A stretch of 64,000 nucleotides of DNA, from positions 124,001-188,000 of IMG/VR virus record IMGVR_UViG_3300042519_004024; one strand, given 5' to 3'. The notes under the pieces are model-generated. The model was not told the DNA's origin, searched no databases, and worked only from the letters and a program-made list of their open reading frames with translations. The position numbers and the translations under genes are program-made. This document shows positions 4,485 to 33,263 of the stretch, in pieces; positions within the stretch are counted from its first letter, which is position 1, and every line of letters begins with the position of its first letter.

Positions 4485-5687
4485 TTATAGAGTTAAAGAA
4501 AAATCAATTCTATTTTTCCATTCACCATCTTTATTATTAACCCAATAAACCCATTTGTGTGGTTTTTCCGTAGTTTTTAAGTCTATTTTTAAATACTCCT
4601 GATATTTGTATAAATCTTGTCTATGTATAACATTCCCCATTTCATCTTCAACACCAATATAAATAAACTTAAAGTTATCAGTAAATGGGATATAAAGATT
4701 TAAATTATATGTTTTTTCAACTTTTTTATACCATTCAGTATTATCGTTTATTGGTGGAAATATTCCTTTAATTGTGTCTTGATGTAACTTTCTATTTTTA
4801 AAATTTATCCCGGCATAATCCTCATATTCTTTATGTGTTCTAACCGAACCTAATCCATATATTGTTAAATCAATATTATTATCTTCTTCTTGTAACATGT
4901 GTCTTAATCTACGTTTGGATTCATTATCCATTTCCCACCATTGTTTTTCAATAATACCATTGTTTTTATTTTCTTGATTAAAATCTGTCCAATGTTTTGT
5001 TCTACCTTCTCTTGTGTATTCGTGCCAAACAACAGTTTTATGTGGATGAAACAAATCATAACCTAAAGTGTATGATCTAATTGATAGACTAATTTCGTCA
5101 CCAGCAAAATAAATGTTTGGGTCGTACTTATATTCTTCACAATGTTTACCTAGTGTGAAAAAGAAATGTCCACTTACAAATCTAGCCGGTATTGGGGTTT
5201 CCAATGTTTGCCAATTTGGGATTGCGTGTGGTCTAAAAAGTATAGTACCACCTGGTGTGAAATTAGATGCAACCATCATATATGGTTCAACATTTAATAA
5301 TTGGTTATCTGATGGTCGGTACATCCCAGCATATGATGTGATGATTGGTTTTTCTGAACCTGTCATATTCATCATTTCAATCAATTCTATATCCCAATCT
5401 TGTAAAAATCTATGATGTGAATCTAACTGCATTGTATATTCTTCACCATCCCACAATTTTTGGATTTCTGAACGAGCCCAACAAAGTCCTTTACTTTCTG
5501 TCCAATGATAATCTAAAATTTTAAATCTCTCATCGTCTGTAAATTCTTCCATTGACTCAGTTTCATCTCTTTGCCAACAAACACCAAATGTTAAATTTTC
5601 AGGGTGTTTTGCTTTATTAATACAATCTCTAATTGTTGGTAAAAGTTCGGGATCCCTATAAGATGCGATTTGTACAAATATTTTCAT
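4485..5687 (-). CDS. GT60-like UDP-GlcNAc:polypeptide GlcNAc-transferase (GlcNAc/PF11397-like, Skp1 Gnt1/mucin-type initiating family)
   Basis: N-terminal IFVQIASYRDPEL..TI, SKGLCWARSEIQKLWDGEEYTMQLDSHHRF (DxH metal motif), GHFFF and YFAGDEISLSIRSYTLGYDLFHP match the family pattern as I recall it. Confidence 0.8.
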   Translation of the reverse strand: MKIFVQIASYRDPELLPTIRDCINKAKHPENLTFGVCWQRDETESMEEFTDDERFKILDYHWTESKGLCWARSEIQKLWDGEEYTMQLDSHHRFLQDWDIELIEMMNMTGSEKPIITSYAGMYRPSDNQLLNVEPYMMVASNFTPGGTILFRPHAIPNWQTLETPIPARFVSGHFFFTLGKHCEEYKYDPNIYFAGDEISLSIRSYTLGYDLFHPHKTVVWHEYTREGRTKHWTDFNQENKNNGIIEKQWWEMDNESKRRLRHMLQEEDNNIDLTIYGLGSVRTHKEYEDYAGINFKNRKLHQDTIKGIFPPINDNTEWYKKVEKTYNLNLYIPFTDNFKFIYIGVEDEMGNVIHRQDLYKYQEYLKIDLKTTEKPHKWVYWVNNKDGEWKNRIDFSLTL

Positions 5688-5732: not shown

Positions 5733-6953
5733 TTATAAATAATATAATACTTCTGCAGTTCCTGCAAATGTTGCGTTTGCACCTAATGGTGTTATACATA
5801 TCCACATTTCGTCAAGTGTTCCGTTAACATTAGAACCAACCCTAATTTGATTATCATCAATTTTTAATGTGGTAAGTGCTGATGTTCCTGATTCACCAAT
5901 AAGTGATGACATAATGTGTCCGTTTGTTGTAACAGTTGCAGTTGTTGTTCCAGTAAATAAACTATACTGAAATGGTGAGTTCGGTATATCCACCCAAGTT
6001 GGTGTTGTAGATATTGTTGGGTTATATTCAACTGTAACCAAATAGTTATCATTTGATGTATTTAAAATACTTAAACTACTATATTGTGATGTAACTGACT
6101 TATAACTTTGTTTAAGCCTATAACCAATATACGGATATTTTGTATCTGAAGTTTCTAAGGTCGTTGTTGTTTGGTGTTGTATACCTACTGTCGAATAAAG
6201 TCCGTTTAACGCTCCTTCGGTTGATACTTGACTACATAACATATCAAAGTATCCTGAACCAACACCTACTTGTCTTATTTCATACCTAATTGGTTGATTT
6301 GGTGATGACATGTAAACGGTAGGTATATTATTTGCCGAAGTATATTCTAAAAAATAAAATGTTTGACCCGATAATACCATTCCAAACCTCATCCTACCAA
6401 CACCTAACCATTGATAATCTACTGTCATTAGATTTGTGTTACTCCAATCAAAATTGTTTACGTCAAAGTCTGTATTATTCCAAGTTGTTGTATCGGCACT
6501 ATAAGTACAAGAACCACTTAAATAAATGTTAAATGTTATCGCACTTGTTACACCATTACTTTCTAAAAAGAACCCGTCAAATACCGAATTGTACGTGGAT
6601 GCCGTTGTTGATGTGAAACATCCAATTCGTTTAATTATATTTGTTTCTATTTGGAAGTTTGAAAAACTGCCTTCAAATAGTTGACTTTTACCTGGTTGAT
6701 AAATTGGGTGTGTTTTAGTTTGTCTAACAACCAAATCGTTATTTGCCGATGTTGACATTCTAACTCTCGCATATTGTTGGTTAAATACTGATGTTGCAGT
6801 ACCTGCGGTTACTTCATTGACCTGTAAAGGATTTTTATCGTAAACGTGTTTAATGTCTAATAAATTTTGAACCGCTGCGGTCCTTAATCTACCGAAAGCG
6901 TCCATATTTGGTCCGTCCGCGTACTTTATTGAGTTGTTAAAAATAAATGACAT
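5733..6953 (-). CDS. Hypothetical virion protein, beta-rich (possible lectin-like fold)
   Basis: 406 aa; N-terminal DAFGRLR motif typical of aquatic phage structural proteins; located in the fibre cluster. Confidence 0.5.
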   Translation of the reverse strand: MSFIFNNSIKYADGPNMDAFGRLRTAAVQNLLDIKHVYDKNPLQVNEVTAGTATSVFNQQYARVRMSTSANNDLVVRQTKTHPIYQPGKSQLFEGSFSNFQIETNIIKRIGCFTSTTASTYNSVFDGFFLESNGVTSAITFNIYLSGSCTYSADTTTWNNTDFDVNNFDWSNTNLMTVDYQWLGVGRMRFGMVLSGQTFYFLEYTSANNIPTVYMSSPNQPIRYEIRQVGVGSGYFDMLCSQVSTEGALNGLYSTVGIQHQTTTTLETSDTKYPYIGYRLKQSYKSVTSQYSSLSILNTSNDNYLVTVEYNPTISTTPTWVDIPNSPFQYSLFTGTTTATVTTNGHIMSSLIGESGTSALTTLKIDDNQIRVGSNVNGTLDEMWICITPLGANATFAGTAEVLYYL

Positions 6954-6957
6954 AATA

Positions 6958-8979
6958 TTAAATTAAATACCAATTTCCGTTTCTCACCATAATGGTGAGA
7001 GACATATAGTTTATATTCATATCAACATATGAATTTCCGTCAATCAAACCCGATGCCGGTGTTAATCTTATTCTAAAAAACCCGGAAGTTCCGGCTTCGT
7101 CTTTTATGACTAAATAATACCCGTCTCTTGACGTTGTTGTTGGTAATGTTAAATCAACATTTGATGATCCACTAACACCCCAATATGATTTATCCCAAGT
7201 TAAGGTTTGTGATGATGTTATCGCGCTTGTTACAAATACATTGATGGGTAAATTTTGATAGGTTGTTGCAGAAATTGTGTTTGCGGTTAAACCATCAGTA
7301 AATGAAGTAGACCCTGTTACAGTACCACCTGTAAATCCATTACTTAACGAACCATCACCCATAACATATTTTGATGATGTACCGCCTTGTGTAATAAATT
7401 TATCTGCATTTATGTATTGAAAATAATCTATTGAATTAGTACTAGTTCCTGTAAGCGTAGAACCTGGTTTATCATATATGGTGTTAATAATTGTGTAAAT
7501 ACCTGCAACACTTATAGGTGCTACATTATTCCCCGCCGTAACAAGCACTTGACTATTTAGCAATGTTAATGTAGTCAAAGATCCCGTTATCGTTATACCA
7601 TTACCACCTAAAGCAGTAACAATACAATCAACTATTGCTAAGTTACCTGCACTAGCTGATGGTGTTACTACACTATTACATCCCTTTATAATAACTTGTG
7701 CTGAGGCATTGCTTACTGATACTCCAACATTTTTATTACCGTTGATAATAGTGATGCCAGCACCAGAAATTTGAATACCTAAAGTACATTGCAGTTCTGA
7801 GTTAATAATTTCAACATAACCACTAGATGATTTGGTTACTTGAGTATCAATAGTACAGTTGCTTATATAAGCTTGAGCTGTTCCACTAATGACAAGGTTA
7901 CTCATCTTCAAACCTGAAATGCGAGTACCAGAACCTAATGTACCAATAGTTAATGTACCTGATAATAGAGTATTTGCTCCTGTTAACTCTGATGTTGAAA
8001 TTGTCGTATTAGTGTTAGCGACCGTAACATTTTCTGAATAAGTACCAGGGTGGATAATTATTGTTTTACGAGACCCAGTAAGTAAGGTTAATGCCTTAGT
8101 AATGGTCGCAACAGGATTAAGTAAATCACCATTACCTGTAGTATCATTTCCATCTATTTGACTTACGTGTATCTCATATTGAAAATTTGACGAAACATTA
8201 TAATATGTTGTTGCCGAAATTGTGTTTGCGGTTAATCCACCATCAATTTTAGTATTACCACTTACATGTAGTTTTTGTGTTGGTGTGGTTGTTCCAATAC
8301 CAACATAACCTCTTGTCGCACCTAAACCTTGTATGTGTATATCAGGTGTTGTCCCATTAGCGGTTTGTCCTGCATAAAATCTAATGTAATCCTCAGTTCC
8401 TGTGCCAGGTGGGTTTAAAAAATTAAAACCATATGTTTCATTACCAGCATAAAAGAATGCGTCACCAACTTTACCATATCCAGGATACGAGACATCATTC
8501 CACGCCCTCATACCTAATTCAAATCCCGCAATTGGTTTTGTTAAATATGGTGTAATTGCGACAGAAATTCTTGGTACGTTTGTATTCCCACTTAAAAGTA
8601 ACCTACCTCCAACACTTTCAGAATCATAATATAATCTACTTTGGATACCTCTAGCGTCAAAAACATATTGTGGTGTGCTTGTATTAATACCTATTCTTTT
8701 ATTTAAAATATCTAAAGTAATTCCGCTTGTTGATCCAAAATACACATCACCCTCATCTAACGGATTTATGTTTAATGGGGAACATGAATGAATATTTGAG
8801 ACATAAAAATCGGTAAAACAATATCCCGAAATAGAATCAAATACTTGTGATATTTTTGCCTTATATGATGAACCATCAGGATCTTGTGAGGTATCTCCTG
8901 TTATTACAATATGTATTAAATCGTCTGTAGTTACACCTGACGCTAATACTCTTTCTGTAAGTCTTTGATAAACTGCCAT
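6958..8979 (-). CDS. Modular tail fibre/spike: shared N-terminal anchor, GIGT motifs, putative right-handed beta-helix, small C-terminal domain
   Basis: IGINTSTPQYVFD and YVGIGTTTPTQKLHVSGN motifs; HVSQIDGNDTTGNG...NPVATITKAL...IIIHPGTYSENV is a typical beta-helix cap; ends LTLP...IKDEAG...IDG...GNWYLI. Confidence 0.7.
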   Translation of the reverse strand: MAVYQRLTERVLASGVTTDDLIHIVITGDTSQDPDGSSYKAKISQVFDSISGYCFTDFYVSNIHSCSPLNINPLDEGDVYFGSTSGITLDILNKRIGINTSTPQYVFDARGIQSRLYYDSESVGGRLLLSGNTNVPRISVAITPYLTKPIAGFELGMRAWNDVSYPGYGKVGDAFFYAGNETYGFNFLNPPGTGTEDYIRFYAGQTANGTTPDIHIQGLGATRGYVGIGTTTPTQKLHVSGNTKIDGGLTANTISATTYYNVSSNFQYEIHVSQIDGNDTTGNGDLLNPVATITKALTLLTGSRKTIIIHPGTYSENVTVANTNTTISTSELTGANTLLSGTLTIGTLGSGTRISGLKMSNLVISGTAQAYISNCTIDTQVTKSSSGYVEIINSELQCTLGIQISGAGITIINGNKNVGVSVSNASAQVIIKGCNSVVTPSASAGNLAIVDCIVTALGGNGITITGSLTTLTLLNSQVLVTAGNNVAPISVAGIYTIINTIYDKPGSTLTGTSTNSIDYFQYINADKFITQGGTSSKYVMGDGSLSNGFTGGTVTGSTSFTDGLTANTISATTYQNLPINVFVTSAITSSQTLTWDKSYWGVSGSSNVDLTLPTTTSRDGYYLVIKDEAGTSGFFRIRLTPASGLIDGNSYVDMNINYMSLTIMVRNGNWYLI

Positions 8980-9294: not shown

Positions 9295-9504
9295 TTATGT
9301 ACAATTTACTAATTCAAAATACTCACATCCTGTTGAATCGATAGTTTTAACCATTAATGTATTCGCACTTGAATAGAAGGGGTTAAGTGTATAAGTTCCT
9401 CCCGTTGTACTTATTAGATAACAGTTATTTCCATATTCATCACATAGATAAATACTTAATGGTGGTGTTCCACCTGTTGTTCCTGATATAGTAATAACAC
9501 TCAT
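9295..9504 (-). CDS. Small SprB/Ig-like protein, third paralogue lacking the FMDG tail
   Basis: GGTPPLSIYLCD...LMVKTIDSTGC; tightly coupled to its neighbours. Confidence 0.65.
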   Translation of the reverse strand: MSVITISGTTGGTPPLSIYLCDEYGNNCYLISTTGGTYTLNPFYSSANTLMVKTIDSTGCEYFELVNCT

Positions 9505-11981
9505 TATTGATAAACTAATATGAATCCATCTTCAGTCATCATAAAATAACTGTCTTCGGTTAATATTATAAATGTGTCTCCACAGTCATCTTGACAAGTC
9601 ACGTCATAATCAATTTTTAATCTTAGGTTAAAAATACAATCAGCCAATGGATCTTCATCACCATTACATTTAGAAACAATTTCAAGAGTGTTTGTCAATA
9701 AATCAACAGTATAACTTTGTATGTTTGGTATACTACTTAAAATACCTTCGATTGTTGATTGCCAAAGGGTGTCTTGTGGAATATCATTTAACGTAGTTGC
9801 AGTATAGAAAGGCACAGTGTATGTAGTATCACCGGATTGACAATCGGCGTACACTAAGAAATCACCATTTTCTGTTGTAATCGTAAATACGTCTTCAGTT
9901 AAAATAAAACACGTATCTCCCGATCCAGGACAATCGATTTCTATTTCACAACTAAACACCGCACCACTAAAACTACAACCTGAGTATCCCGAAATGATAT
10001 CAACATATCCTTCATTTAACATCTCTGAAAGTCCTCTTTTTGTCCCAACAGTTGTGGTAAAAGTACTATTACAAACATTAAATAGTTGGTAGGATGTTGG
10101 TGCGATTCCGTTACATATTATTGTAAAATATTGTATATCGTAACAACCGTTACTATCTGTTATTTCGACATAATAATTACCAGCAGATAATCCCGTAACT
10201 GTTGAACCTGTTTGTCCATTACTCCAATTATATGTGAATGTAGGTTCTCCCTGATATATAACAACCTCGGCAAATCCATCATTACCGTTTACACAATCAA
10301 CTTTTTGTATTGATGTAACTAATTGTCCGCTAGTTGTTATTGTAAATCCTGTCGATACTGCACATCCGACACTATCTGTAACCGTTATTGTATAGTTACC
10401 AGGTAATAAGTTATTATATGTTACTGCAGTTGTTGTTGTATCAATTAAAGTGTCACCATTACTTAACACATAATCTAATACACCACTATAACCACTATAC
10501 ACCTCAATATATGCAACTCCGTTTGAAACCCCACAAGTTGATCCGGTAGTTGTTGCACTTACCGTAAATTTTTGAGTAGAATTTATATTTATTGTTGTTG
10601 TATATTCACAGGCAGTTCCTGAACCTGAAATCGTTAAAACATAAGTATCATTTTGTAAATTTGTAAAATTATTAGTCTGATTTAAACTAGTGTTTTGAAT
10701 AACTTGATTTGAATTTTGTCCCGATAGTGTATAAGTATAGTATCCACCCAAACCAGCAATCTGTACGTCAATCTCACCATTATTTTGATTACAGTCTGAG
10801 TTGGTGACAATTATGTCGACTACATTAAATCCTCCTACGGGACTTAGAAACCCGCTTAATGTTGTTTCACAAAAATTAGCATCTCTTACAACTACTTGGT
10901 AGGTTCCTGCAGCTAAATTTGTTAATGTAAACGTGTTTGAAAGTGTGTATCCAACCTGCGCAGTTGATGCGGAATAATAAAAAGGTGCGGTTCCTCCTGT
11001 TAAAATATATGTTAAACTACCATCCGAAGCAAAACAAGAAGGTGTGGACGCACTTAATAATCCAATCCCTAATGGTGCCGCGTTTCCAACATATTCACTT
11101 TTTGTTAGTTCACATCCATTCGCATCAGTCACAGTACAAGTATATACTCCTTGTGTTAGTCCTGTTATTAATTGTGTTGTTTCACCATTACTCCATAAAT
11201 ACGTATAAGGCCCCGTACCCGTTAAACCTGTTACCGCTAACTTACCTTTATCAATAACACAATTTGAGGTGTTAACAACCCAAAACCCATAATCTAAAGA
11301 AGTACTTGCAGATATTATAGCATTTTCAGTGTTAGCAGTGGTACCACCTGAATCAAAAACAGTAGCATAATAAATACCACTAGGTAAACCGTTAAAATCG
11401 TATGGTAAAGTTCCTGTTGTTTCTACATCGTAAGGAACACCGTCTTGATAAAGAAGAATAGTGTATGGTGCACCTGAAGATGTTGCACTTATAGTCAAAA
11501 ATCCTGTATCTTGACCACAAGTAGTGCCCGATGCAGTAACCACATTCGCCTCAAAACATCCTGTTACATTAACATTAATATATAATTCATTATTTTGTAA
11601 ATTAAGAGTATCATTTAATCTGAACACATAAGTACCACCCGTTAATCCTGTAAATGTTATAGGTGAACTACTTGTTTGAGCGGTTAAAGTTCCCGGAATA
11701 ATATTATCAATTGTGTATGGTGCAACACCACCATATGAAGTGAAAGTTACACTACCTGTTGCTGCGGAGCAAACCCCCGTAACTTGGAATCCGTAACTAA
11801 GTGGTCCTGATGTACATGTTTGAGTACAAGTCACCCCTGTAGCAATATAAACTCCTCTTGCCGAACCGGAAAATGATTCATCTATACATATACTTTCACC
11901 AAGTGAAACACCGAATTGGTATAATCCACAACAATCAATATATTCATAAACACCATCGGTTAAACCTGATATACAAGCCAT
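9504..11981 (-). CDS. SprB-repeat adhesin-like virion protein
   Basis: Repeated GxxPY(T/Y)YxWSNGxTxxxITGLxxGxYxxTVTDxNGC units, e.g. GPYTYLWSNGETTQLITGLTQGVYTCTVTDANGC and PTFTYNWSNGQTGSTVTGLSAGNYYVEITDSNGC. Confidence 0.8.
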   Translation of the reverse strand: MACISGLTDGVYEYIDCCGLYQFGVSLGESICIDESFSGSARGVYIATGVTCTQTCTSGPLSYGFQVTGVCSAATGSVTFTSYGGVAPYTIDNIIPGTLTAQTSSSPITFTGLTGGTYVFRLNDTLNLQNNELYINVNVTGCFEANVVTASGTTCGQDTGFLTISATSSGAPYTILLYQDGVPYDVETTGTLPYDFNGLPSGIYYATVFDSGGTTANTENAIISASTSLDYGFWVVNTSNCVIDKGKLAVTGLTGTGPYTYLWSNGETTQLITGLTQGVYTCTVTDANGCELTKSEYVGNAAPLGIGLLSASTPSCFASDGSLTYILTGGTAPFYYSASTAQVGYTLSNTFTLTNLAAGTYQVVVRDANFCETTLSGFLSPVGGFNVVDIIVTNSDCNQNNGEIDVQIAGLGGYYTYTLSGQNSNQVIQNTSLNQTNNFTNLQNDTYVLTISGSGTACEYTTTININSTQKFTVSATTTGSTCGVSNGVAYIEVYSGYSGVLDYVLSNGDTLIDTTTTAVTYNNLLPGNYTITVTDSVGCAVSTGFTITTSGQLVTSIQKVDCVNGNDGFAEVVIYQGEPTFTYNWSNGQTGSTVTGLSAGNYYVEITDSNGCYDIQYFTIICNGIAPTSYQLFNVCNSTFTTTVGTKRGLSEMLNEGYVDIISGYSGCSFSGAVFSCEIEIDCPGSGDTCFILTEDVFTITTENGDFLVYADCQSGDTTYTVPFYTATTLNDIPQDTLWQSTIEGILSSIPNIQSYTVDLLTNTLEIVSKCNGDEDPLADCIFNLRLKIDYDVTCQDDCGDTFIILTEDSYFMMTEDGFILVYQ

Positions 11982-12012: not shown

Positions 12013-14964
12013 TCATGGTGTTACCGATTGGGTACAATTAATTTGTAAATCAACACCGATATTTAAATAAAGTGTTTTATTTGTAAAATTATCATAACAC
12101 GTAGAATTACTAACAATTAGTGTACTTCCCGCAAAATAATAATTAAGTCCATAATTATATAACCCCACCAAATATGTATTTGCCGCATTTGAAAAATCAG
12201 TGAGTGTCGGATATCCGGATATTCCGTATCCCGTATAAAACTGTTCTTGTATCAATACTTGAGAATCTAATCGACAATCAATATACCAATTAGTAACAAT
12301 ACTATTCAAATCACAATCACTTTGTGTAAAACCACTATTAGTTAACACATTGTTTAGTGCAAAGTTTAAAACTGCTGCCGGATCAACTTTAGTCTCACAT
12401 TTTAGTGTTTGATCAATACAATCATAACTAAACGGTTCACCATTATATGTACAAGGAATACAGGCAACAGGTATAAACGCACAACCTCTTTGTCTTCTCC
12501 AAACAAATTTTTGTCTGTGGAAAATAGAATTTTCCATCTTTTGTCCTGTTAACCATAATGTTGTTCCAGGTACCACTTGTTCTAAAAGTCTTTGCCAATG
12601 ATCCCCTAATCCTAAAGTATAGTCAATCATCTTTTGGTAAGTAAATTTATTAGAAGGTATGCCCACTGTTTGTTCAGACTCTAAATACCTCCAATAAACT
12701 GACTGTAGTGTTGGGTATCCTCCTGTTTTACCATCAAATATTGTTTGTCTATTTCTTACATTAATAAAATTATTATAGAAACTTTGAGCGAACTCAAAGA
12801 ATGTTTTTTCTTTTGGTTTTGGATTAATAAAAGTCCAATCCACGTTTCCTGGGTAAGGGTATGGTGCGGTTAATCCTGAATTTGGTATTGGGTAATTATA
12901 CTTAACGGACATATCCCAAATGTCATAAGTAATACCTTGCCCCATATTAACATATACCTCAATATTTTTTGAATTAATAATTAACCTATCGTCACTAACA
13001 GTATAGTCAACACCATTAAAATTAGAATTATCTTTTCTATTTCCAATGTCATTAACCGCCCAAGATTTTTGGTTGTCATTTATTTTTGTTAGAGTATATC
13101 CTTCAGCAATGTCAGGAAAATCTCTAAATCTATCCATATATTCCTGTCCATAACTAAACGGTTTTAATGATGATATTAGATATGGATTTGTTGGATTAAA
13201 CGATGAATTGGCTGAATCCGCCACTTCAGGTGAACGATGTTTTGGGCTTTTTTCAAACCACCCAGCACCTTTTTGAAAAAAGTTATCGTCTGTAGTTGCA
13301 GGACTTTGTGGGTAACCGTCGGCACCAATACCATAATCTTCAAGTGTTGTTGATATTAAATTTATAACTCCACTCGTAGTGTATCCAGTATATATGTTAC
13401 CCATAATACTAAATGTATTTGCCGGATCTAACACAGGTGTTTCTACATATGAGGTACCTCCCGATATCTGACAATATTTTTCATAAAATTCATTATAGTT
13501 AATTTTGGTGTCCGCCAAATACACCACCTCATTAAATTCAAGTAATGCTTCAGGAGCACCAACAAATCTCATTATATATTCTAATGATTGTCTAGTCCCT
13601 TTTGTTCTAAACATATAAGCCGAATTTAATATTATATTTCTATAATATTCATAATTTAACTCTGTTGGTGTTGATGATACCGCCTGTCCCGGAAAAACTT
13701 GTTTTGCGTTAGGATCAAACACCGCATTAACAAAACTTTCATTTGTTATTGGTGAAATGTCCGAATTAATCCCTAAAGTTTGTGCTAAATTTGTTAATAA
13801 TTGTGATGGTATATCATTACCGACTTGGTAATTAACTGAATTCATGTATGCTAACGCATCTATAAATTTTTTAACTTCGTCAAAACTTCTACCGTAAATT
13901 TGTAATACTTTTTCTATTTTTTGATCCGAAGTATCAAATTCCTTAAAAGAACCTGTAATTAAAAAACGACTTATTAAGTCTGTTTTATATTCATCTAATT
14001 TTTCAGCAATTGATTGTATATCTGAAAGATATTTTTCAAACTTAGATCCATTAATATTTAAATTCCAATATTTGTCTAAAGGCCAAGTAACGGTTTTACT
14101 AAATAGTGTATATTTACCAGCTGAATCATAATCAGGGTAAGTAAATTTGGCACTATATTTAGGAAAAACATAACGATTTAATAAAAAATCTTCAACCTCA
14201 TCAAAATTATTTAAAAACTCTTTTTCTGTAACTTCATTATTAGGTTTAATAACTAAATTAAATGTTGATGCTGATTGTTCAGGAAACATTTCACCTTTAA
14301 CTGTTACGGTTAAAGTTCCTCCTGTCATATTCTCAACAGGAATCATATCTGTTATTTGATATTCAGTACTAAGATCCCTAAAATATACCGCATAATCTTC
14401 AAAATTATTAGTCATGTCACGATAAGGACTAACAGGTATTGGTCTTGTTGATACATTTCTCGCAGCATTATCAGAATAATCAATACTGAATGGGTTATAA
14501 ATTAAACCACTATCAATATCAAAAGTCGTTTCATCATTTTTTCTGTCGTACGTAATATTATATGCAGTGTTACCTGTATATAAACCTGAAGCTTGTCTTG
14601 GGTAGACTTCTAATCCGGCAGGAAAATAATTAATTATTTTTATTATGGATGTTGACAATCTTTTTTGTAATGATCCATATAATGAAAAACTTGTTATTTC
14701 AGAGATATCAAAATTAGGATAAACCTTAAAAGTTTTTTCAATAATTTTTTTTATTTCTTGTATATTATCAATTTTAAGATTCTCTAAAGTATAAGGATTA
14801 GAGAATACGCCGGTATCAAACTTTCTATTTGTTTTTTCGTATATAGCACTTGTAAACTCAAAGTTACCCTGCGTCAAACCACCCCCATCAACAATCTGAA
14901 GTCCTACTATATTATCGGAAAAGGTTTTTACTCCTCCAGGTGGGAAAAAAATTTTATTTGCCAT
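12013..14964 (-). CDS. Baseplate wedge protein (T4 gp7/P2 gpI-like domain)
   Basis: LLTNLAQTLGI...YYRNIILNSAYMFRTKGTRQSLEYIMRFVG resembles the gpI/gp7 KGT motif; located in the baseplate cluster. Confidence 0.55.
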   Translation of the reverse strand: MANKIFFPPGGVKTFSDNIVGLQIVDGGGLTQGNFEFTSAIYEKTNRKFDTGVFSNPYTLENLKIDNIQEIKKIIEKTFKVYPNFDISEITSFSLYGSLQKRLSTSIIKIINYFPAGLEVYPRQASGLYTGNTAYNITYDRKNDETTFDIDSGLIYNPFSIDYSDNAARNVSTRPIPVSPYRDMTNNFEDYAVYFRDLSTEYQITDMIPVENMTGGTLTVTVKGEMFPEQSASTFNLVIKPNNEVTEKEFLNNFDEVEDFLLNRYVFPKYSAKFTYPDYDSAGKYTLFSKTVTWPLDKYWNLNINGSKFEKYLSDIQSIAEKLDEYKTDLISRFLITGSFKEFDTSDQKIEKVLQIYGRSFDEVKKFIDALAYMNSVNYQVGNDIPSQLLTNLAQTLGINSDISPITNESFVNAVFDPNAKQVFPGQAVSSTPTELNYEYYRNIILNSAYMFRTKGTRQSLEYIMRFVGAPEALLEFNEVVYLADTKINYNEFYEKYCQISGGTSYVETPVLDPANTFSIMGNIYTGYTTSGVINLISTTLEDYGIGADGYPQSPATTDDNFFQKGAGWFEKSPKHRSPEVADSANSSFNPTNPYLISSLKPFSYGQEYMDRFRDFPDIAEGYTLTKINDNQKSWAVNDIGNRKDNSNFNGVDYTVSDDRLIINSKNIEVYVNMGQGITYDIWDMSVKYNYPIPNSGLTAPYPYPGNVDWTFINPKPKEKTFFEFAQSFYNNFINVRNRQTIFDGKTGGYPTLQSVYWRYLESEQTVGIPSNKFTYQKMIDYTLGLGDHWQRLLEQVVPGTTLWLTGQKMENSIFHRQKFVWRRQRGCAFIPVACIPCTYNGEPFSYDCIDQTLKCETKVDPAAVLNFALNNVLTNSGFTQSDCDLNSIVTNWYIDCRLDSQVLIQEQFYTGYGISGYPTLTDFSNAANTYLVGLYNYGLNYYFAGSTLIVSNSTCYDNFTNKTLYLNIGVDLQINCTQSVTP

Positions 14965-24715: not shown

Positions 24716-26554
24716 TTATGAAAAGTCTACCGTTTTAAGGCTCTTAACCCTAACCTTAATATCCTTATTGTCAAATTTAACTTGATAAATTTGATCTGGT
24801 TCCGCAAAAATAGTATCGTCAATTAATCCAATTTCTCTTGTAACTTTATTAACATATTTTTGTGATGTTTCAGATGAAGAATATTGTCCACCAACTTTAT
24901 TGTATATTTTTAAATCAGATAGTGTAGAAACACCGGCTACGTTTTGTATTAATCGTCTAACATCAGATACGTTAACATTTTGTCCTAACTCCCTATTGCC
25001 AGGTTCCATATAGTTTGCAACAGAATTAATGATTTCGGTAATGACTTGTCCTTGGTTTCTATCCGATTCCATCACTACAAAAATTTCAAATTCCAAATCA
25101 ACTACCTTCGCAACATCAATAGAAATGTAATCGTTTATCATTCTATATTTAGAAAGGTATGTTGCTAAATTAGATTTCAAGTTATTTGAAACGACTTGTG
25201 TTAGTTTTCCTGAAGTATCGTAAGATAATATTTGAATTCTAATTTTATTGTTATTTTCAGTTATTGAAACTTTTGCAGGAGCCCCAAACTTACCCGGCAT
25301 TGTATCTATTAATGATTTATAATCATTCACAGTTACCGCTCTTTTTTGTGCCGCAAAATTAAAAGACACCATATTTCTAACCTCTTCTGTTGTTGGTGGG
25401 TTTGATCCTCCAATCGCAGCGGTAACATTTGTTATTGATAATGAATTTTGTACGTTTGTGTTTACTATGTCTGAAGGTCCTGTTATTGAAAAATCTATGG
25501 TACCTACTTGATTAATTACCCCTACACCAACATTTGATGCAATCCCACCACCTATTCTATATTGAACAAAAACTGTAGTATTTGGTTGTACGGTTAAACC
25601 TAACCCTATATTATTTTGGTAATTCGCCAAATCTAATTTAATGCCATTTCTTGCAAAGTCAGCCAATTGTTGGTTTGGGGTGTTAGTTCCCCCACCAAAT
25701 TGTACCTTCATAAACCCTTCAGGTGTGTATTCTGTTATAAATCTATTTTCAGTCTTTATATATTTACCAACTTTAACACCCGCATTATCTGTTGGTTTTG
25801 TTGGGTCCTCAATAAATACAGTATCTTCAGCTAAAGCGTCCACCTCATACCATCTATTTTGTGAACTTAAAAAATCACCGTATGATGGTATATTAGGGTA
25901 ACTAGTCCCATCTTTTTGTATTATGGATGTTACTCCAAGTACGTTTCTTTCAGGTAAAAAGAAATTAAAAAACGGAACAACGTCAGCAGGATTAATAACC
26001 CTTTTGAATACCTTTGTTGTACCATTAACAACCACTTCCCTTTTTGTTATAATATAATTTATAATTTTATTATTAGCATCAAAAGTAGGTACTTTTGTTC
26101 TATTTACGAAACCTTCTTGATTATACTGTGTTGAGAAGTCGATATCGTAAACAGTCTCAAAGGATGTCCCCGCACCATTAAATTGTGATCCGGCCCTTAA
26201 AATACCTAAATATCTATAATCCTCACTATCACCTAATGGTGGTACTGTAATAGATATGTCAACAACTGCAACTGATGGGCGATAACCTGGTATTTTTAAA
26301 CCATAAGTTCTTGCAATATTGTAAATTGATGATCTTTGTTGAGCATACTGTAGAACAGTTTCTTGTATACTTCTATCAATATGAAAATGTAAATTATCAG
26401 CAACCGCAGCATTCAAATCCATTAGAACTGAAAACACCGATGCGTCATTAAAATTTTGTACTAATTCAGGGTAATACTGTTTAGTATAATTTATCAAGTC
26501 TTGTCTTATCCCTTGAAAGTCCCTCGTTGTATAATTTATCTTTTGGTTAGCCAT
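24716..26554 (-). CDS. Baseplate wedge subunit (T4 gp6/baseplate J-like)
   Basis: INYTTRDFQGIRQDLINY...DLNAAVADNLHFHIDRSIQE...A..R.SIY..A...G and AQKRAVTVNDY are gp6 hallmarks. Confidence 0.85.
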   Translation of the reverse strand: MANQKINYTTRDFQGIRQDLINYTKQYYPELVQNFNDASVFSVLMDLNAAVADNLHFHIDRSIQETVLQYAQQRSSIYNIARTYGLKIPGYRPSVAVVDISITVPPLGDSEDYRYLGILRAGSQFNGAGTSFETVYDIDFSTQYNQEGFVNRTKVPTFDANNKIINYIITKREVVVNGTTKVFKRVINPADVVPFFNFFLPERNVLGVTSIIQKDGTSYPNIPSYGDFLSSQNRWYEVDALAEDTVFIEDPTKPTDNAGVKVGKYIKTENRFITEYTPEGFMKVQFGGGTNTPNQQLADFARNGIKLDLANYQNNIGLGLTVQPNTTVFVQYRIGGGIASNVGVGVINQVGTIDFSITGPSDIVNTNVQNSLSITNVTAAIGGSNPPTTEEVRNMVSFNFAAQKRAVTVNDYKSLIDTMPGKFGAPAKVSITENNNKIRIQILSYDTSGKLTQVVSNNLKSNLATYLSKYRMINDYISIDVAKVVDLEFEIFVVMESDRNQGQVITEIINSVANYMEPGNRELGQNVNVSDVRRLIQNVAGVSTLSDLKIYNKVGGQYSSSETSQKYVNKVTREIGLIDDTIFAEPDQIYQVKFDNKDIKVRVKSLKTVDFS

Positions 26555-26556
26555 AA

Positions 26557-27021
26557 TTAAATATTAATAATTACGAATTCTCTACTTCCGAATGCTTTAT
26601 TTTCGTCAGTATAATCGATTTTTAGTTTTGCTGTGTATTCCGCAGTATTTGCCCCCGGTATTTTATATATACTTGCTTGACCCAATAATTCATAATCTAA
26701 TTGCCCAACAACTTCGTCGGTTTCGGTGTAGGGTTCTATAGTAATACTATTAATTAACAAATTTGGTATATATTTTGCAACTTGTTCTTCAATGTCAGAT
26801 TTTATATTTTCAAACGTTTCACCATCTAATGGTTCAAAAATAAATTCATAAATTCTAGTTCCAAAATCGGGCAAATAATATCTACTTCCCTTTCTTGTTA
26901 ATATTAAATGCAATAAGTCTGTCCTAATCTCTTCATCTGATTGTTGAGTTAGTAACAAATAATCTCCTACATTACTTTGTCTAAACGGAAAACTTATTCC
27001 ATATGTTCTACCATCTGCCAT
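26557..27021 (-). CDS. Baseplate wedge subunit, gp25/GPW-like
   Basis: GISFPF...EEIRTDLLHLILTRKGSRYYLPDFGTRIYEFIFEP. Confidence 0.9.
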   Translation of the reverse strand: MADGRTYGISFPFRQSNVGDYLLLTQQSDEEIRTDLLHLILTRKGSRYYLPDFGTRIYEFIFEPLDGETFENIKSDIEEQVAKYIPNLLINSITIEPYTETDEVVGQLDYELLGQASIYKIPGANTAEYTAKLKIDYTDENKAFGSREFVIINI

Positions 27022-27391: not shown

Positions 27392-29251
27392 TTAAACGAT
27401 TTCACATGCGCCACCCGCACACGCAGCTTCTCCTCGTAGATCGGTGTTATCTTGTAACTCAATTACTTTTGTAAGATTAACATCTGATAATGTTTTAACC
27501 AATCTTTCAAAATCTTCTTTTGTACAATCTTCAAAAGGGGCTTGTGTGTAAGTTCCTCCGTTGTAAGGTAGTACTGACAAACCGTTATAGAAATCTCTAT
27601 TGTTCCACATCCAATCACCAACTAAACTCCACTCGTCTTCTTTAATTGATACTGTAGCAGATACGTTGTGTGTGTTTTGTCCGTTTCTATGTCCAGGTTT
27701 AATCCATTCTTGAGATACTTTCTTAACTCTTTCCAACATTTGGAACACTGATTCATGTCTTACGATTGAACCTTCAGGTGCTCTTTGTGGGATAGTAATT
27801 ACCGCAGTATCGTGAGGACGGAAAAACTCATCTTCAATCAACTCAGGATGATTAATCGCCAAGTATGAATAGATTGATTCGTTTTTACCAACACGGATTC
27901 TTCTTAGGTAATAATCATTATGCCATGCGTGGATTCCTGATGATGTACCCAATACCAATGATGAGGTACCTGATGGTTTAACTGTTGTTGTTCTTGCGGA
28001 TTTGTTGATTCCAATAAGACCAGCAACTCTTTCGTTTTCTTCTTTAACCATCTTAGCCGCTTTTTTCATATCATAACCCAACACAACACCTGAACCAATT
28101 CCTGTCATACCTACACCGATAAGTGCATCTTTTTCAGTTGTTCTTTTCCAAATATCTCTTAAATAATGGAAGTCTGTGTATCCTGCCTGTAGTGTACCAA
28201 TGAACGATGCCGCCCTAACTCTTGCATCAAAGTCTTCTTGTGATTCAATATCTGAAGCGTTAACCTCACATAAGTTACAGAATTGGAATGGACGAAGTGC
28301 GATTTCACAACAAGGGTTTGTTCCCCAATCTTTATCGTTAGATAAGTAGATTCCAGGTTCACCTGCGCCTGACAACTCAATACGTTTCCACAAATCCATA
28401 AAAAATTCTTTTGTGATTTTGTGACGAAGAAGAACCGCCGAGTTATTTGCTCTACCTCTTTGTGCGTTTTGTTCCCACCAACTTCCTGATTTACAAGAAA
28501 TCATTTCTTCATCATCTGCCGAAAATAATGAGATAAGAGCCGCACGTCTGATACCACCCGCTAGTACTGCATCCGCAATATGACATACGATATCGTGAGT
28601 TTCAATTGGTGTTAGTTTTTCTCCATCTTTTTTGTTATCCAATACTTTTGTAATGTTATGGATACAATCTTTTAATGGTTGAGGGCCCGGAGCCTTTCCC
28701 CCTGATGTTACAAGCATCGCACCTTTTTGTCTAATATCTGAAAAGTCGAATATAGGTGTTGATGACTTATAACCTAAATATGATTCCATTAATACTTTAA
28801 TGGCATCTGCCCACCCTTCAATAGAATCACCAATAAGGTATCTTCTTGTTCTTTCAGGATTTGGTTTTTTAATATCTGGTAGTTTTTCAACGTGGTGTTT
28901 TTGAACTGAGTAACCAACTCCTGTTCCACCTAAAAGTAAAAACATTGTTTCAGAAAACGAGTCAACGTGATCGATTGGCATATATGCACAATTATAAACT
29001 CTGTTTGGTGAGATTTCAATTGGCTTTCCACCAAATTGTAAAGATCTCATAGATGGTAAAACTTTCTTGTCGTACACCATTTTATATACCTCTTCAATCT
29101 CATCTTTGATGTGTGGGTACTTTCTTTGGTGCATCTCTTTGTTACGTGTTACCAACTCTTCCCAAGTCTCTCTCCGATTCTTTTCGGGTTGAAACTTAGC
29201 GTATTTCATAAAGACAGTAATGTCACTTAATATTTTTTGCGAAATATCCAT
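27392..29251 (-). CDS. nrdJ: Class II (adenosylcobalamin-dependent) ribonucleotide reductase, RTPR/NrdJ type
   Basis: RVYNCAY, GTNPCCEI, FCNLCEVN, TTVKPSGT and C-terminal ACAGGACEIV; no ATP cone and no intein seen. Confidence 0.9.
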   Translation of the reverse strand: MDISQKILSDITVFMKYAKFQPEKNRRETWEELVTRNKEMHQRKYPHIKDEIEEVYKMVYDKKVLPSMRSLQFGGKPIEISPNRVYNCAYMPIDHVDSFSETMFLLLGGTGVGYSVQKHHVEKLPDIKKPNPERTRRYLIGDSIEGWADAIKVLMESYLGYKSSTPIFDFSDIRQKGAMLVTSGGKAPGPQPLKDCIHNITKVLDNKKDGEKLTPIETHDIVCHIADAVLAGGIRRAALISLFSADDEEMISCKSGSWWEQNAQRGRANNSAVLLRHKITKEFFMDLWKRIELSGAGEPGIYLSNDKDWGTNPCCEIALRPFQFCNLCEVNASDIESQEDFDARVRAASFIGTLQAGYTDFHYLRDIWKRTTEKDALIGVGMTGIGSGVVLGYDMKKAAKMVKEENERVAGLIGINKSARTTTVKPSGTSSLVLGTSSGIHAWHNDYYLRRIRVGKNESIYSYLAINHPELIEDEFFRPHDTAVITIPQRAPEGSIVRHESVFQMLERVKKVSQEWIKPGHRNGQNTHNVSATVSIKEDEWSLVGDWMWNNRDFYNGLSVLPYNGGTYTQAPFEDCTKEDFERLVKTLSDVNLTKVIELQDNTDLRGEAACAGGACEIV

Positions 29252-29276
29252 TTTTAATTTATTTTAATAATTTATT

Positions 29277-30656: not shown

Positions 30657-30693
30657 ATTGTTGAGATTTTGTTCCTTGTTTTAATAAATATTG

Positions 30694-31146
30694 TTAAACT
30701 AATGAATAATTCATCATCTCAAAAGATAAATTTTTCTCTGATAAAATGTCAGTCAACTCTCTTAAAATGTTTTTTATGTCTGGGCGTACATCCAGCGTAT
30801 ATCTTACTTTTGGTGGGTACAGTTTCGCATCAATAATTCTATGACAAATTGTCTCATTTCCAACCTTTAAAATAATGTTAAATATTTCAGGTCCATCTGT
30901 ATTTGACGTTTCAAGGATTGATGAGTCCTCTTCGATTTGGAATCTGTTCTCAAGCATATAAACAACACATTTGTTTCGTAGTTTTGTTTGTAGTGTGTTT
31001 GAAAGTGATTTTATAAAATCATACAATTCTACACTACCTTTAACTTTAGGGTTATACCCTTTTACGTTAAAGAATCTTTGAACTACAAAGTTGTTGTTTA
31101 GCGTGATTAAGAACTCAACCTTTGTTACATCATTCTGCTCTTTCAT
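30694..31146 (-). CDS. Hypothetical protein in the replication block
   Basis: 150-aa ORF between the exonuclease and helicase genes. Confidence 0.6.
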   Translation of the reverse strand: MKEQNDVTKVEFLITLNNNFVVQRFFNVKGYNPKVKGSVELYDFIKSLSNTLQTKLRNKCVVYMLENRFQIEEDSSILETSNTDGPEIFNIILKVGNETICHRIIDAKLYPPKVRYTLDVRPDIKNILRELTDILSEKNLSFEMMNYSLV

Positions 31147-31150
31147 AATT

Positions 31151-32158: not shown

Positions 32159-32179
32159 TTCTGTATTATTACAGGGTTC

Positions 32180-33187: not shown

Positions 33188-33211
33188 ATATTGTTTGTTT
33201 TTTTAAAAGTT

Positions 33212-33244
33212 AAAAAAAGGTAGTGACTTTATCAATCACTACCT
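33212..33244 (-). terminator. Rho-independent terminator after the SSB gene
   Basis: 9-bp stem AGGTAGTGA/TCACTACCT with a 9-nt loop and a minus-strand T-run. Confidence 0.7.
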
Positions 33245-33263
33245 ATCTTTTATAGGATTTTTA

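What the first reader, a model, noticed from the sequence alone, without database searches (positions are those of the whole stretch)
9504..11981. Phage protein built from SprB gliding-adhesin repeats
Seen: multiple YxWSNGxT..ITGLxxGxYxVTVTDxNGC repeats, no signal peptide and no T9SS C-terminal domain. Known: SprB repeats characterise the Bacteroidota gliding adhesin. Inference: captured from a Bacteroidota host and reused as an extended virion fibre or spacer, possibly binding the surfaces or polysaccharides the host glides on.
Basis: partly seen in the sequence, partly recalled or inferred. Interest (0 to 1): 0.6.

Follow-up and report, generated by a model that had tools for sequence, protein, structure and literature searches.

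The report
Phage fibre built from SprB-type domains
A large freshwater phage that probably infects Bacteroidota encodes, beside its baseplate genes, an old and widely conserved protein made of seven SprB-type immunoglobulin-like domains with a swappable tip, most likely a virion surface fibre, which is a new example of a known way phages decorate their particles.

Summary
Window 9504-11981 (minus strand) is one 825-aa ORF. It passes Pfam's SprB cut-off (53 bits against 28) and has no signal peptide, membrane segment or T9SS sorting domain.

Layout: a ~58-aa Cys-rich N-terminal domain, seven ~75-85-aa SprB-type Ig-like domains, a family-specific alpha/beta C-terminal domain and a variable tail.

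The domain type has a real Bacteroidota affinity:
- All 12 plasmid matches are Bacteroidota.
- The nearest solved fold is Aureispira GhpA.
- Cultured-phage matches are Flavobacteriia phages only, including a proteomics-verified structural protein.

The element is a roughly 300-kb lake myophage with Bacteroidia-style start regions (no Shine-Dalgarno motif; A at -3, -6 and -10 to -13).

"Captured from the host" is only partly right:
- The gene is an old core gene (565 IMG/VR contigs, more than 2,800 proteins, conserved gene order).
- Each of the seven domain positions forms its own clade across the family.
- Whole-protein patterns found it in no genuine bacterial genome.

Most likely role (inferred, not shown): a virion-exposed accessory fibre near the baseplate, anchored by its N-terminus, with the Ig domains as stalk and a swappable C-terminal tip. 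This is a new member of a known kind, of moderate interest.

The parts
9504..11981 (-). Whole ORF, 825 aa (P0001): SprB-type multi-domain phage protein.
   Evidence: ORF list and translation. Pfam SprB 53 bits. Full-length homologues at 43-97% identity.
11808..11981 (-). N-terminal ~58-aa small beta domain with six conserved Cys (C3, C17, C18, C32, C52, C56). Proposed virion anchor (inferred).
   Evidence: AF2 model has strands 3-16, 21-34 and 42-51 at pLDDT about 80. The Cys are invariant or nearly so in 68 sequences.
11556..11807 (-). SprB-type Ig-like domain D1 (aa 59-142).
   Evidence: Repeat alignment. Position-specific clade with SH-aLRT 99. All-beta in the model.
11298..11555 (-). SprB-type Ig-like domain D2 (aa 143-228); it lacks the closing Cys.
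   Evidence: (clade support 98).
11076..11297 (-). SprB-type Ig-like domain D3 (aa 229-302). It has the most canonical motif and is the best conserved block in the family.
   Evidence: Identity 0.84 over residues 251-275. It is the part matched by the T5 pb10 Ig domain 5LXK.
10833..11075 (-). SprB-type Ig-like domain D4 (aa 303-383).
   Evidence: clade support 91.
10575..10832 (-). SprB-type Ig-like domain D5 (aa 384-469), with a degenerate motif.
   Evidence: clade support 89. Best Pfam stretch at 391-421.
10332..10574 (-). SprB-type Ig-like domain D6 (aa 470-550).
   Evidence: clade support 93.
10110..10331 (-). SprB-type Ig-like domain D7 (aa 551-624), with a canonical motif.
   Evidence: clade support 99.
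9582..10109 (-). C-terminal alpha/beta domain (aa 625-800). It is conserved across the family and has no assigned fold.
   Evidence: Conservation. AF2 model of 614-825, with core blocks at pLDDT 78-93. Best PDB Z only 5.3. The Atlas returns only the same viral family, then weak HMA-like rows.
9807..9956 (-). About 50-aa insertion (aa 676-725) carrying the first ILTED..F..TE(N/D)G.FLVY motif. It is present in only about a third of the 120 listed homologues.
   Evidence: Occupancy 0.31-0.39. Motif scan. Low pLDDT.
9507..9581 (-). Variable C-terminal tail (aa 801-825) with the second ILTED..F..TEDGF.LVY motif. It occupies the family's module-swap slot after the conserved I.YD..C.
   Evidence: Tails of 120 homologues compared. 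Occupancy 0.43. Motif scan.
12013..14964 (-). Upstream neighbour, 983 aa, no family assigned. It is always next to the SprB gene in related contigs.
   Evidence: No Pfam, PHROG, NCBIfam or PDB match. Synteny.
24716..27021 (-). Baseplate wedge genes (gp6-like, 612 aa, and gp25-like, 154 aa) that head the gene run containing the SprB gene.
   Evidence: phrog_219 and phrog_10646. phrog_261 and phrog_43.
5733..8979 (-). Downstream structural genes: a 673-aa tail protein and a 406-aa virion structural protein.
   Evidence: phrog_4577 'tail protein' at 4.7e-07 and phrog_1645 'virion structural protein' at 1.7e-51.

Best explanation
The ORF encodes a virion-exposed accessory fibre of a roughly 300-kb freshwater myophage that most probably infects Bacteroidota. 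In the proposed model the small Cys-rich N-terminal domain fixes the protein to the particle, probably at the baseplate or tail periphery. Seven tandem SprB-type Ig-like domains form an acidic, Thr/Ser/Gly-rich, beads-on-a-string stalk. My estimate of its length is 25-30 nm, taking 3.5-4 nm per Ig domain. The conserved alpha/beta C-terminal domain plus an exchangeable terminal module form the distal tip. The fibre would make weak, reversible contacts with glycans on host cells or on particles, raising the chance of a productive encounter, as proposed for other phage Ig-like domains.

Shown here: the domain architecture, its homology to Bacteroidota T9SS adhesin repeats, the phage context, the gene's age and conservation, and the variable C-terminal slot.

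Inferred: presence in the virion, the attachment site, the orientation, the oligomeric state and any ligand.
For: Architecture and domain type:
- Pfam SprB is above cut-off, and seven units align with each other.
- The AF2 model is all-beta through residues 59-624, at pLDDT mostly 80-90.
- The top Foldseek hits are GhpA of Aureispira (E 1e-18 to 1e-20), a T9SS fibre made of SprB-like Ig repeats (preprint 10.1101/2024.01.29.577165).

Structural gene context:
- The run reads gp25-like, gp6-like, six unassigned or PKD-bearing ORFs (1670, 583, 281, 380, 302 and 983 aa), the SprB gene, two small ORFs, a tail protein and a virion structural protein, all on one strand.
- The same order holds in 175-228-kb contigs.

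Distal C-terminus:
- The core is collinear and evenly conserved over residues 1-675 and 726-800.
- After I.YD..C, homologues carry nothing, short tags, Pro-Thr linkers with modules of 110-380 aa, or a Fib_succ_major domain.

Precedent in virions:
- Cellulophaga phage phi19:1 gp98 is annotated as structural from MS/MS proteomics and lies two genes after the tape measure gene.
- It contains two SprB-type domains by the phage-domain HMM (E 8.5e-13).
- A second protein of this phage (P0177) has two such domains and matches phrog_26672 'virion structural protein'.
- Weak profile matches to Ig domains of T5 decoration protein pb10 (5LXK) and to a neck whisker protein (PMC5292684).

Host:
- No Shine-Dalgarno use, and A enriched at -3, -5/-6 and -10 to -13, as in Flavobacterium johnsoniae (PMC6847099).
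- The Bacteroidota promoter element TAnnTTTG is enriched upstream of genes (22 against 8.6 +/- 2.8).
Against: - There is no direct evidence that the protein is in the particle. No PHROG family matches it.
- None of the six ORFs between the gp6-like gene and it, nor the two small ORFs just downstream, has a recognised structural family or PDB relative.
- Fibres of tailed phages are usually trimers with coiled-coil or beta-helical shafts, whereas strings of Ig domains are typical of monomeric decoration proteins. A capsid or neck location is therefore equally compatible with the fold.
- The C-terminal domain has no assigned fold or ligand.
- The 31 conserved Cys suggest disulfides, which are unusual for proteins assembled in the cytoplasm.
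- The host assignment is indirect.
Confidence: 0.55

Rival explanations
1. It is a capsid or neck decoration protein of the Hoc/pb10/whisker type, not a baseplate or tail fibre. One end would bind the head or neck, and the Ig string would project as a monomer.
For: - Beads-on-a-string Ig architecture.
- The only PDB sequence-profile matches are Ig domains of decoration proteins (5LXK, 8ZVI) and of a neck whisker protein (9OCC), at E 6e-4 to 5e-3.
- In pb10 the Ig domain is solvent-exposed and the other domain binds the capsid (PMC5292684).
Against: - The gene sits in the baseplate-wedge-to-tail-protein run, not beside head genes.
- The PDB matches cover only one Ig domain and are weak.
- There is no similarity to a known capsid-binding domain.
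Confidence: 0.2
2. It is the primary receptor-binding tail fibre that sets host range, with the C-terminal domain and its modules as the specific receptor-binding tip.
For: - Position after the baseplate genes.
- Variable C-terminal modules joined by Pro-Thr linkers.
- One module is a Fib_succ_major domain.
Against: - Many homologues end right after the conserved core with no tip module.
- The C-terminal alpha/beta domain is as conserved as the stalk (identity about 0.5-0.7), unlike typical fast-evolving receptor-binding tips.
- There is no trimeric fibre signature or chaperone motif.
- Larger unassigned proteins nearby (983, 1670, 673, 698 and 791 aa) are equally good candidates.
Confidence: 0.15
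3. It is a recently acquired host gene fragment (a moron) with a non-structural role, for example interfering with the host's gliding or T9SS machinery by mimicking SprB.
For: - The domain type is shared only with Bacteroidota T9SS substrates.
- The lack of a signal peptide would keep it in the cytoplasm.
Against: - 565 IMG/VR contigs and more than 2,800 proteins carry it with conserved synteny.
- Each domain position is its own old clade.
- Identity to bacterial repeats is only 27-37%.
- A scan of 185,579 species genomes with whole-protein patterns found only two short mis-binned contigs.
- It lies inside a structural gene run.
Confidence: 0.05

Closest known systems
SprB / RemA / GhpA-type T9SS surface adhesins of Bacteroidota (Pfam PF13573 repeats)
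   Same: - It shares the same ~75-aa Ig-like domain, with the C...(N/D)G start and the GL..G.Y.V.V.D..GC end.
- The phage-domain HMM finds 31, 10 and 7 tandem copies in Runella and Aureispira proteins.
- GhpA is the nearest solved fold.
- Both have an extended fibre-like build.
   Different: - It has no Sec signal peptide and no T9SS C-terminal sorting domain. An 823-aa Aureispira protein with seven such domains has both.
- It has 825 aa rather than thousands.
- Its seven domains are individually diverged at fixed positions, whereas the bacterial arrays are homogenised within each protein.
- Its N- and C-terminal domains are phage-specific.
- It is encoded in a phage structural gene run.
Cellulophaga phage phi19:1 gp98 and its homologues in Nekkels and Polaribacter P12002 phages
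   Same: - It is a phage protein carrying SprB-type domains (HMM E 8.5e-13) in the tail-distal gene region.
- The host is Flavobacteriia.
- It is annotated as structural from MS/MS proteomics.
   Different: - It belongs to a siphophage of about 57 kb.
- It has only two SprB-type domains inside a 707-aa protein that is otherwise unrelated.
- It falls below Pfam's SprB threshold.
- It is not an orthologue. Only the paralogue P0177 finds it by tblastn; P0001 domains D3-D4 do not.
Phage Ig-like decoration and appendage proteins (T4 Hoc, T5 pb10, lambda gpV C-domain)
   Same: - Ig-like domains are displayed on virions, are dispensable in the laboratory, and are proposed to give weak carbohydrate or surface adhesion (PMC5292684; review PMC7602432, listed).
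- There is a weak profile match to the pb10 Ig domain.
   Different: - The Ig subfamily differs (SprB-type).
- It has seven domains rather than one to three.
- It shows no homology to their capsid-binding parts.
- Its gene context is baseplate rather than head.
'Moraphages', aquatic jumbo phages up to 307 kb with predicted Bacteroidota hosts (PMC12619734)
   Same: - Aquatic habitat, genome size class, a myophage core (gp6, gp25, sheath, tube), a sigma factor gene and a predicted Bacteroidota host.
   Different: - Membership was not tested, because none of their sequences were held here.
- The 214 kb held lacks the DnaK and ClpA-type genes listed for most moraphages, but the record is only about 71% complete.
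- The paper does not mention SprB or Ig-like proteins.

Membership tests
SprB repeat domain family (Pfam PF13573) | Score above Pfam's gathering threshold | tested here: met
   53 bits against a 28-bit cut-off, in 5 stretches.
SprB repeat domain family (Pfam PF13573) | Homology over the whole ~75-aa domain to the repeats of Bacteroidota T9SS adhesins, not only the 37-residue Pfam motif | tested here: met
   An HMM of the phage units matches 48 bacterial domains end to end, at i-E 1e-10 to 1e-21. tblastn gives 27-37% identity over 4-5 domains.
SprB repeat domain family (Pfam PF13573) | Ig-like beta-sandwich fold | tested here: met
   The AF2 model is all-beta with pLDDT mostly 80-90. The best Foldseek hits are GhpA Ig repeats, followed by other multi-Ig chains.
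SprB/RemA-type gliding adhesins (T9SS substrates) | N-terminal Sec signal peptide | tested here: not met
   No basic n-region or hydrophobic core; the highest KD19 in the first 40 windows is 1.11. The start is conserved in the family.
SprB/RemA-type gliding adhesins (T9SS substrates) | C-terminal T9SS sorting domain (type A TIGR04183/PF18962, or type B gliding C-terminal domain) | tested here: not met
   PF18962 is absent. TIGR04183 gives 13.5 bits, below the 23-bit cut-off and internal to the protein; no type B domain was listed.
SprB/RemA-type gliding adhesins (T9SS substrates) | Encoded in a Bacteroidota genome | tested here: not met
   The record is a virus with a sheath, tube, baseplate and 24 tRNAs. 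The genome-wide scan found only two contigs under 5 kb in unrelated MAGs.
Phage Ig-like decoration proteins (Hoc / pb10) | Sequence homology to the capsid-binding domain | tested here: not met
   Only single Ig domains match, weakly. There is no Pfam or PHROG hit to Hoc or pb10 families.
Phage Ig-like decoration proteins (Hoc / pb10) | Presence on the virion surface | not testable with these tools
   This needs virion proteomics or cryo-EM. Only context and the phi19:1 gp98 precedent are available.
T4-type baseplate-peripheral or fibre proteins (gp9-gp12, wac) | Sequence or profile similarity to those families | tested here: not met
   No PHROG, Pfam or NCBIfam match.
T4-type baseplate-peripheral or fibre proteins (gp9-gp12, wac) | Position downstream of gp25/gp6-like wedge genes in one co-oriented run | tested here: met
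   The order is conserved in related contigs.

The most novel reading that the evidence does not exclude
The SprB-type stalk may be more than a spacer. By copying the host's own gliding-adhesin domain, the fibre might engage the same partners as SprB-type filaments. Those partners could be the surfaces and polysaccharides that gliding Bacteroidota adhere to, or the host's SprB-type filaments themselves through lateral Ig-Ig contacts like those that bundle GhpA. Either way the phage would be concentrated exactly where its gliding, particle-attached hosts are. The swappable C-terminal modules would then tune the fibre to different particles or hosts.
Probability: 0.07. Interest if true: 0.8.

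Novelty: new member of a known kind. Interest (0 to 1): 0.4.

Why it matters
Ig-like domains on phage particles are a long-known theme. Here the domain is the specific type used by Bacteroidota for their T9SS-secreted gliding and grappling fibres, and among cultured phages it turns up only in phages of Flavobacteriia.

That makes the SprB-type domain a possible sequence marker for linking uncultured phages to Bacteroidota hosts.

It also marks a very abundant, conserved lake-phage protein (565 IMG/VR contigs, near-identical copies in at least 16 lake metagenome runs) whose exchangeable C-terminal modules are natural candidates for adhesion specificity. If binding were shown, it would give a handle on how large phages find particle-attached freshwater Bacteroidota.

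Tried and rejected
- A BLASTP self-comparison listed no internal repeat pairs. The units are too diverged (27% identity), so motif, HMM and alignment methods were used instead.
- PHROGs gave nothing for the protein or for most neighbours.
- phmmer against the PDB gave nothing for four neighbours.
- C-terminal domain: the VIA wide search reached at best Z 5.3 (FliC D2, podophage nozzle domains, LPMO modules), which is within the noise for that tool. The Atlas shape search returned only the same viral family and weak HMA-like rows. I assign no fold. The weak Pfam HMA hit (E 0.029) is not taken as membership.
- The ILTED..TEDG..LVY motif occurs nowhere else in the 214 kb, and residues 676-825 have no match in 50,697 phage records. 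It stays unexplained.
- The genome-contig scan used patterns outside the SprB motif. It therefore tests for whole-protein relatives, not for bacterial SprB repeats. The plasmid tblastn filled that gap.
- Relatives cannot be drawn for a virus record, so no phylum-wide genome census of PF13573 could be run.
- The 'provirus' label is rejected as evidence of lysogeny. No tyrosine integrase was found in the record, the record carries 24 tRNAs, and related contigs reach 282-292 kb.
- Precomputed PF18962 tags on some homologues are faint internal hits like the one here, not real sorting domains. For example, P0013 ends with the same ILTED tail.
- RNA evidence is only three 151-227-nt contigs at about 99% identity in two metatranscriptomes. 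That is too little to claim expression.
- Moraphage membership could not be tested.
- My recollection that the 642-kb LR756502 phage was predicted to infect Bacteroidetes could not be confirmed in the held library, and the record names no host. It is not used as evidence.
- Not run: the large representative protein search (the family was already well populated) and complex prediction (no binding claim is made).
Full report
**1. What is there**

Window 9504-11981 holds one minus-strand ORF of 825 aa. The start is reliable: M1, A2 and C3 are nearly invariant in 68 aligned homologues.

The protein is very acidic and rich in hydroxyl residues:
- T 125, G 89 and S 73 residues; D+E 75 against K+R 13; no His; 31 Cys.
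- Nearly all the Cys are conserved across the family.

Pfam's SprB repeat scores 53 bits against a cut-off of 28, in five stretches.

Motif scanning, self-alignment and an AlphaFold2 model built on 68 homologues (mean pLDDT 77.6) give this layout:
- residues 1-58: a small three-stranded domain with six Cys;
- residues 59-624: seven Ig-like units of 74-86 residues. Each usually starts with C...(N/D)G and ends with GL..G.Y.V.V.D..GC;
- residues 625-800: an alpha/beta domain;
- residues 801-825: a short tail.

The other five units are degenerate; mean pairwise identity between units is 27%.

There is no signal peptide or membrane segment and no T9SS sorting domain. TIGR04183 gives 13.5 bits, which is below its cut-off and lies inside unit 7.

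**2. It is a phage, and the gene sits among tail and baseplate genes**

The window is bases 124001-188000 of a 213,924-base IMG/VR record that CheckV rates about 71% complete.

The record carries:
- tail genes: a sheath, a tail tube and a baseplate hub;
- wedge genes: gp25-like and gp6-like;
- replication genes: RNR, DnaB, UvsX, SSB and an exonuclease;
- 24 tRNA genes;
- no tyrosine integrase.

Related contigs reach 282 and 292 kb. The 'provirus' label is therefore probably a classification artefact for a large lytic-type myophage.

On the minus strand the order of ORFs (products in aa where no family is assigned) is: gp25-like, gp6-like, 1670, 583, 281, 380 (with a PKD domain), 302, 983, the SprB protein, 69, 94, a 673-aa 'tail protein' (phrog_4577), a 406-aa 'virion structural protein' (phrog_1645), then a glycosyltransferase. 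The same order recurs in contigs of 175 and 228 kb whose SprB proteins are only 49-56% identical to this one.

**3. It is an old, abundant core gene and not a visible capture**

The word-based protein search scored more than 2,800 relatives. The best 120 are nearly all full-length, at 43-97% identity, and lie on contigs of up to 228 kb.

Further counts:
- 565 IMG/VR contigs encode a relative.
- The nearest ESM Atlas clusters are 100% viral.
- Near-identical DNA occurs in at least 16 lake-water metagenome runs from many studies.

A pattern scan of one genome for each of 185,579 prokaryote species found only two hits. Both are contigs under 5 kb, binned into a Woesearchaeota MAG and a Polynucleobacter MAG, and are best explained as mis-binned phage DNA.

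Across the family the protein is collinear and evenly conserved over residues 1-675 and 726-800.

In a tree of single domains, each of the seven positions forms its own clade across six family members (SH-aLRT 89-99; D3 also draws in one long-branched bacterial unit). The bacterial arrays instead cluster by protein. The seven-domain array was therefore fixed before the family diversified. The deep branches are unresolved, so the tree supports neither a single capture nor a direction of transfer.

**4. The Bacteroidota affinity is real**

tblastn of units 3-7 against 72,556 plasmids matched 12 records. All are Bacteroidota: Runella, Spirosoma, Aureispira, Persicobacter, Emticicia, Hymenobacter, Flavobacterium and Bergeyella. 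The matching genes are annotated as T9SS sorting-domain or SprB repeat-containing proteins.

An HMM built from the phage units alone finds 31 consecutive domains in the Runella protein, and 10 and 7 in two Aureispira proteins.

One Aureispira protein has 823 aa and seven such domains. It carries a signal peptide and a typical C-terminal sorting domain. Only its repeat region aligns with the phage protein, at 27% identity over about 520 residues.

The best structural matches of the model are fragments of GhpA, the heptameric T9SS 'grappling hook' of Aureispira. Its authors describe it as SprB-like, built of 52 Ig-like repeats with disulfides between neighbouring domains (preprint 10.1101/2024.01.29.577165).

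**5. The host is probably a Bacteroidota member (indirect evidence)**

- Only 4.5% of 198 ORFs have a Shine-Dalgarno-like motif upstream, which is below the 9% background. G is depleted, and A peaks at -3, -5/-6 and -10 to -13.
- This is the pattern reported for Flavobacterium johnsoniae, whose phylum does not use Shine-Dalgarno pairing: A at -3 and -6, and an A-rich stretch from -14 to -11 (PMC6847099).
- From my own knowledge, TAnnTTTG is the Bacteroidota -7 promoter element. It is enriched on the sense strand of upstream intergenic DNA (22 observed; shuffles 8.6 +/- 2.8; antisense 13). TATAAT is not enriched.
- Among 50,697 cultured or deposited phage records, a SprB-type domain from this phage's second such protein matches only Cellulophaga and Polaribacter phages, plus one uncultured 642-kb phage.
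- G+C is about 32%.

None of this is proof.

**6. What it most likely does**

Direct evidence for a place in the virion is lacking. The case rests on four points.

(a) The structural gene run (section 2).

(b) A precedent. Cellulophaga phage phi19:1 gp98 lies two genes after the tape measure gene and is annotated as structural from MS/MS proteomics. The phage-domain HMM finds two SprB-type domains in it (E 8.5e-13), although it falls below Pfam's threshold.

(c) A paralogous use in the same phage. A 533-aa protein about 10 kb downstream of the SprB gene in the direction of transcription, just outside the window's low-coordinate end (G000 122038-123639), has two SprB-type domains. It matches phrog_26672 'virion structural protein'.

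(d) The C-terminus behaves like an exposed tip. After the conserved I.YD..C at about residue 796, homologues carry one of several endings:
- nothing at all;
- a short CSMSGYTFEINQP-type tag;
- Pro-Thr linkers followed by unrelated modules of about 110 to 380 residues;
- a Fib_succ_major domain.

In this phage the slot holds a 25-residue ILTED..F..TEDGF.LVY element. A second copy sits in a 50-residue insertion that only about a third of the 120 listed homologues have.

I therefore read the N-terminal Cys-rich domain as the anchor, the seven Ig domains as a stalk, and the C-terminal domain plus its module as the distal end.

The function would be accessory and reversible adhesion, as proposed for other phage Ig-like domains (PMC5292684). 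The ligand is unknown. The C-terminal domain has no assignable fold: the best PDB match has Z 5.3, and the Atlas returns only the same viral family.

A capsid or neck decoration role is the main rival. Its support is the set of weak profile matches to Ig domains of T5 pb10 and of a neck whisker protein. A primary receptor-binding role is a second rival. A non-structural host-mimic role is unlikely.

**7. Comparison and novelty**

The protein belongs to the SprB repeat domain family. It is not an SprB/RemA-type adhesin, because it lacks both secretion signals, the size and the bacterial genomic setting.

It works most like the Ig-bearing appendages and decoration proteins of other phages, but it is not a sequence member of those families.

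In the held library the phrase 'SprB repeat' occurs in two papers, neither about phages, and the moraphage paper mentions no SprB or Ig-like protein. Databases do already tag the family with PF13573. I rate it a new member of a known kind, of moderate interest because of three things: its abundance in lakes, the clear restriction of the domain to Bacteroidota and their phages, and the modular tip.

**8. Limits**

- Host, virion location, orientation, oligomeric state and ligand are all inferred.
- The domain tree rests on 75 columns.
- RNA evidence is three short contigs in two metatranscriptomes and is not used as proof of expression.
- Read laying was given 2,478 letters.
- No alternative genetic code was needed.

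Noticed in passing
G000:C1:122038-123639 (-), just outside the window's low end (= L012:18038-19639): A second SprB-type protein (P0177, 533 aa) with two SprB-type domains (about residues 18-91 and 268-343) separated by other modules. It scores 40 bits on Pfam SprB and matches phrog_26672 'virion structural protein'. Related contigs keep it as a 527-543-aa protein. Part of it (around residues 175-235) looks by eye like the ~110-aa C-terminal add-on module of some P0001 homologues; I did not test this.
   Followed up: partly
window 35143-42156 (-) and 42415-48804 (-): Two giant ORFs (2337 aa and 2129 aa) lie between the baseplate hub/tube/sheath genes and the replication genes. Neither has a named PHROG family: there is no hit for the first, and the second matches only phrog_16450, of unknown function.
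   Followed up: no
window 27392-34121 (-): A block of replication and nucleotide genes (RNR, DnaB-like helicase, exonuclease, UvsX-like recombinase, SSB) splits the tail genes (sheath, tube, hub) from the baseplate wedge and fibre genes, all on one strand.
   Followed up: no
G000:C1:70388-82201 (-), outside the window: A cluster of 24 tRNA genes, two of them with unassigned anticodon calls by ARAGORN.
   Followed up: no
whole G000 record, upstream regions of ORFs: Shine-Dalgarno motifs are absent, and A peaks at -3, -5/-6 and -10 to -13. TAnnTTTG is enriched upstream of genes, with five copies starting exactly 12 bases before the ATG. This could be a conserved promoter or leader element of one gene class.
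   Followed up: partly
L010 (CAYGYN010000032.1) and L011 (CAYVBV010000144.1): Two contigs under 5 kb that encode this phage protein sit in GTDB species-representative MAGs labelled Woesearchaeota and Polynucleobacter. They are most likely phage contigs mis-binned into those MAGs.
   Followed up: partly
window 9807-9956 and 9507-9581 (-): The motif ILTED..F..TE(N/D)G.FLVY occurs twice in this protein. It occurs nowhere else in the 214-kb record and in no deposited phage. It is found in only a subset of the family, and it was modelled with low confidence as short strands.
   Followed up: partly
homologues P0007, P0021, P0043, P0053, P0084, P0094-P0101, P0114, P0119, P0120: Long Pro-Thr (PTPTPT) linkers join the conserved core to diverse C-terminal modules. 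Such linkers are typical of secreted carbohydrate-active proteins (my knowledge) and unusual in phage structural proteins.
   Followed up: partly
L020 (Aureispira anguillae plasmid pAUEb, 58730-65925): The bacterial 823-aa 'SprB repeat-containing protein' sits between an RHS repeat protein and a gene annotated 'tail fiber domain-containing protein'. This is a neighbourhood of polymorphic-toxin or adhesin type.
   Followed up: no
window 4485-5687 (-) and G000 199-214 kb: A glycosyltransferase (phrog_24687) lies inside the structural gene run, and related contigs have GlcNAc-transferase and HtrL_YibB genes at the same place. A second glycosyltransferase lies in a run of similar-sized plus-strand ORFs of about 190-475 aa at the record's right end. 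This hints at glycan modification of virion proteins or of the host surface.
   Followed up: no
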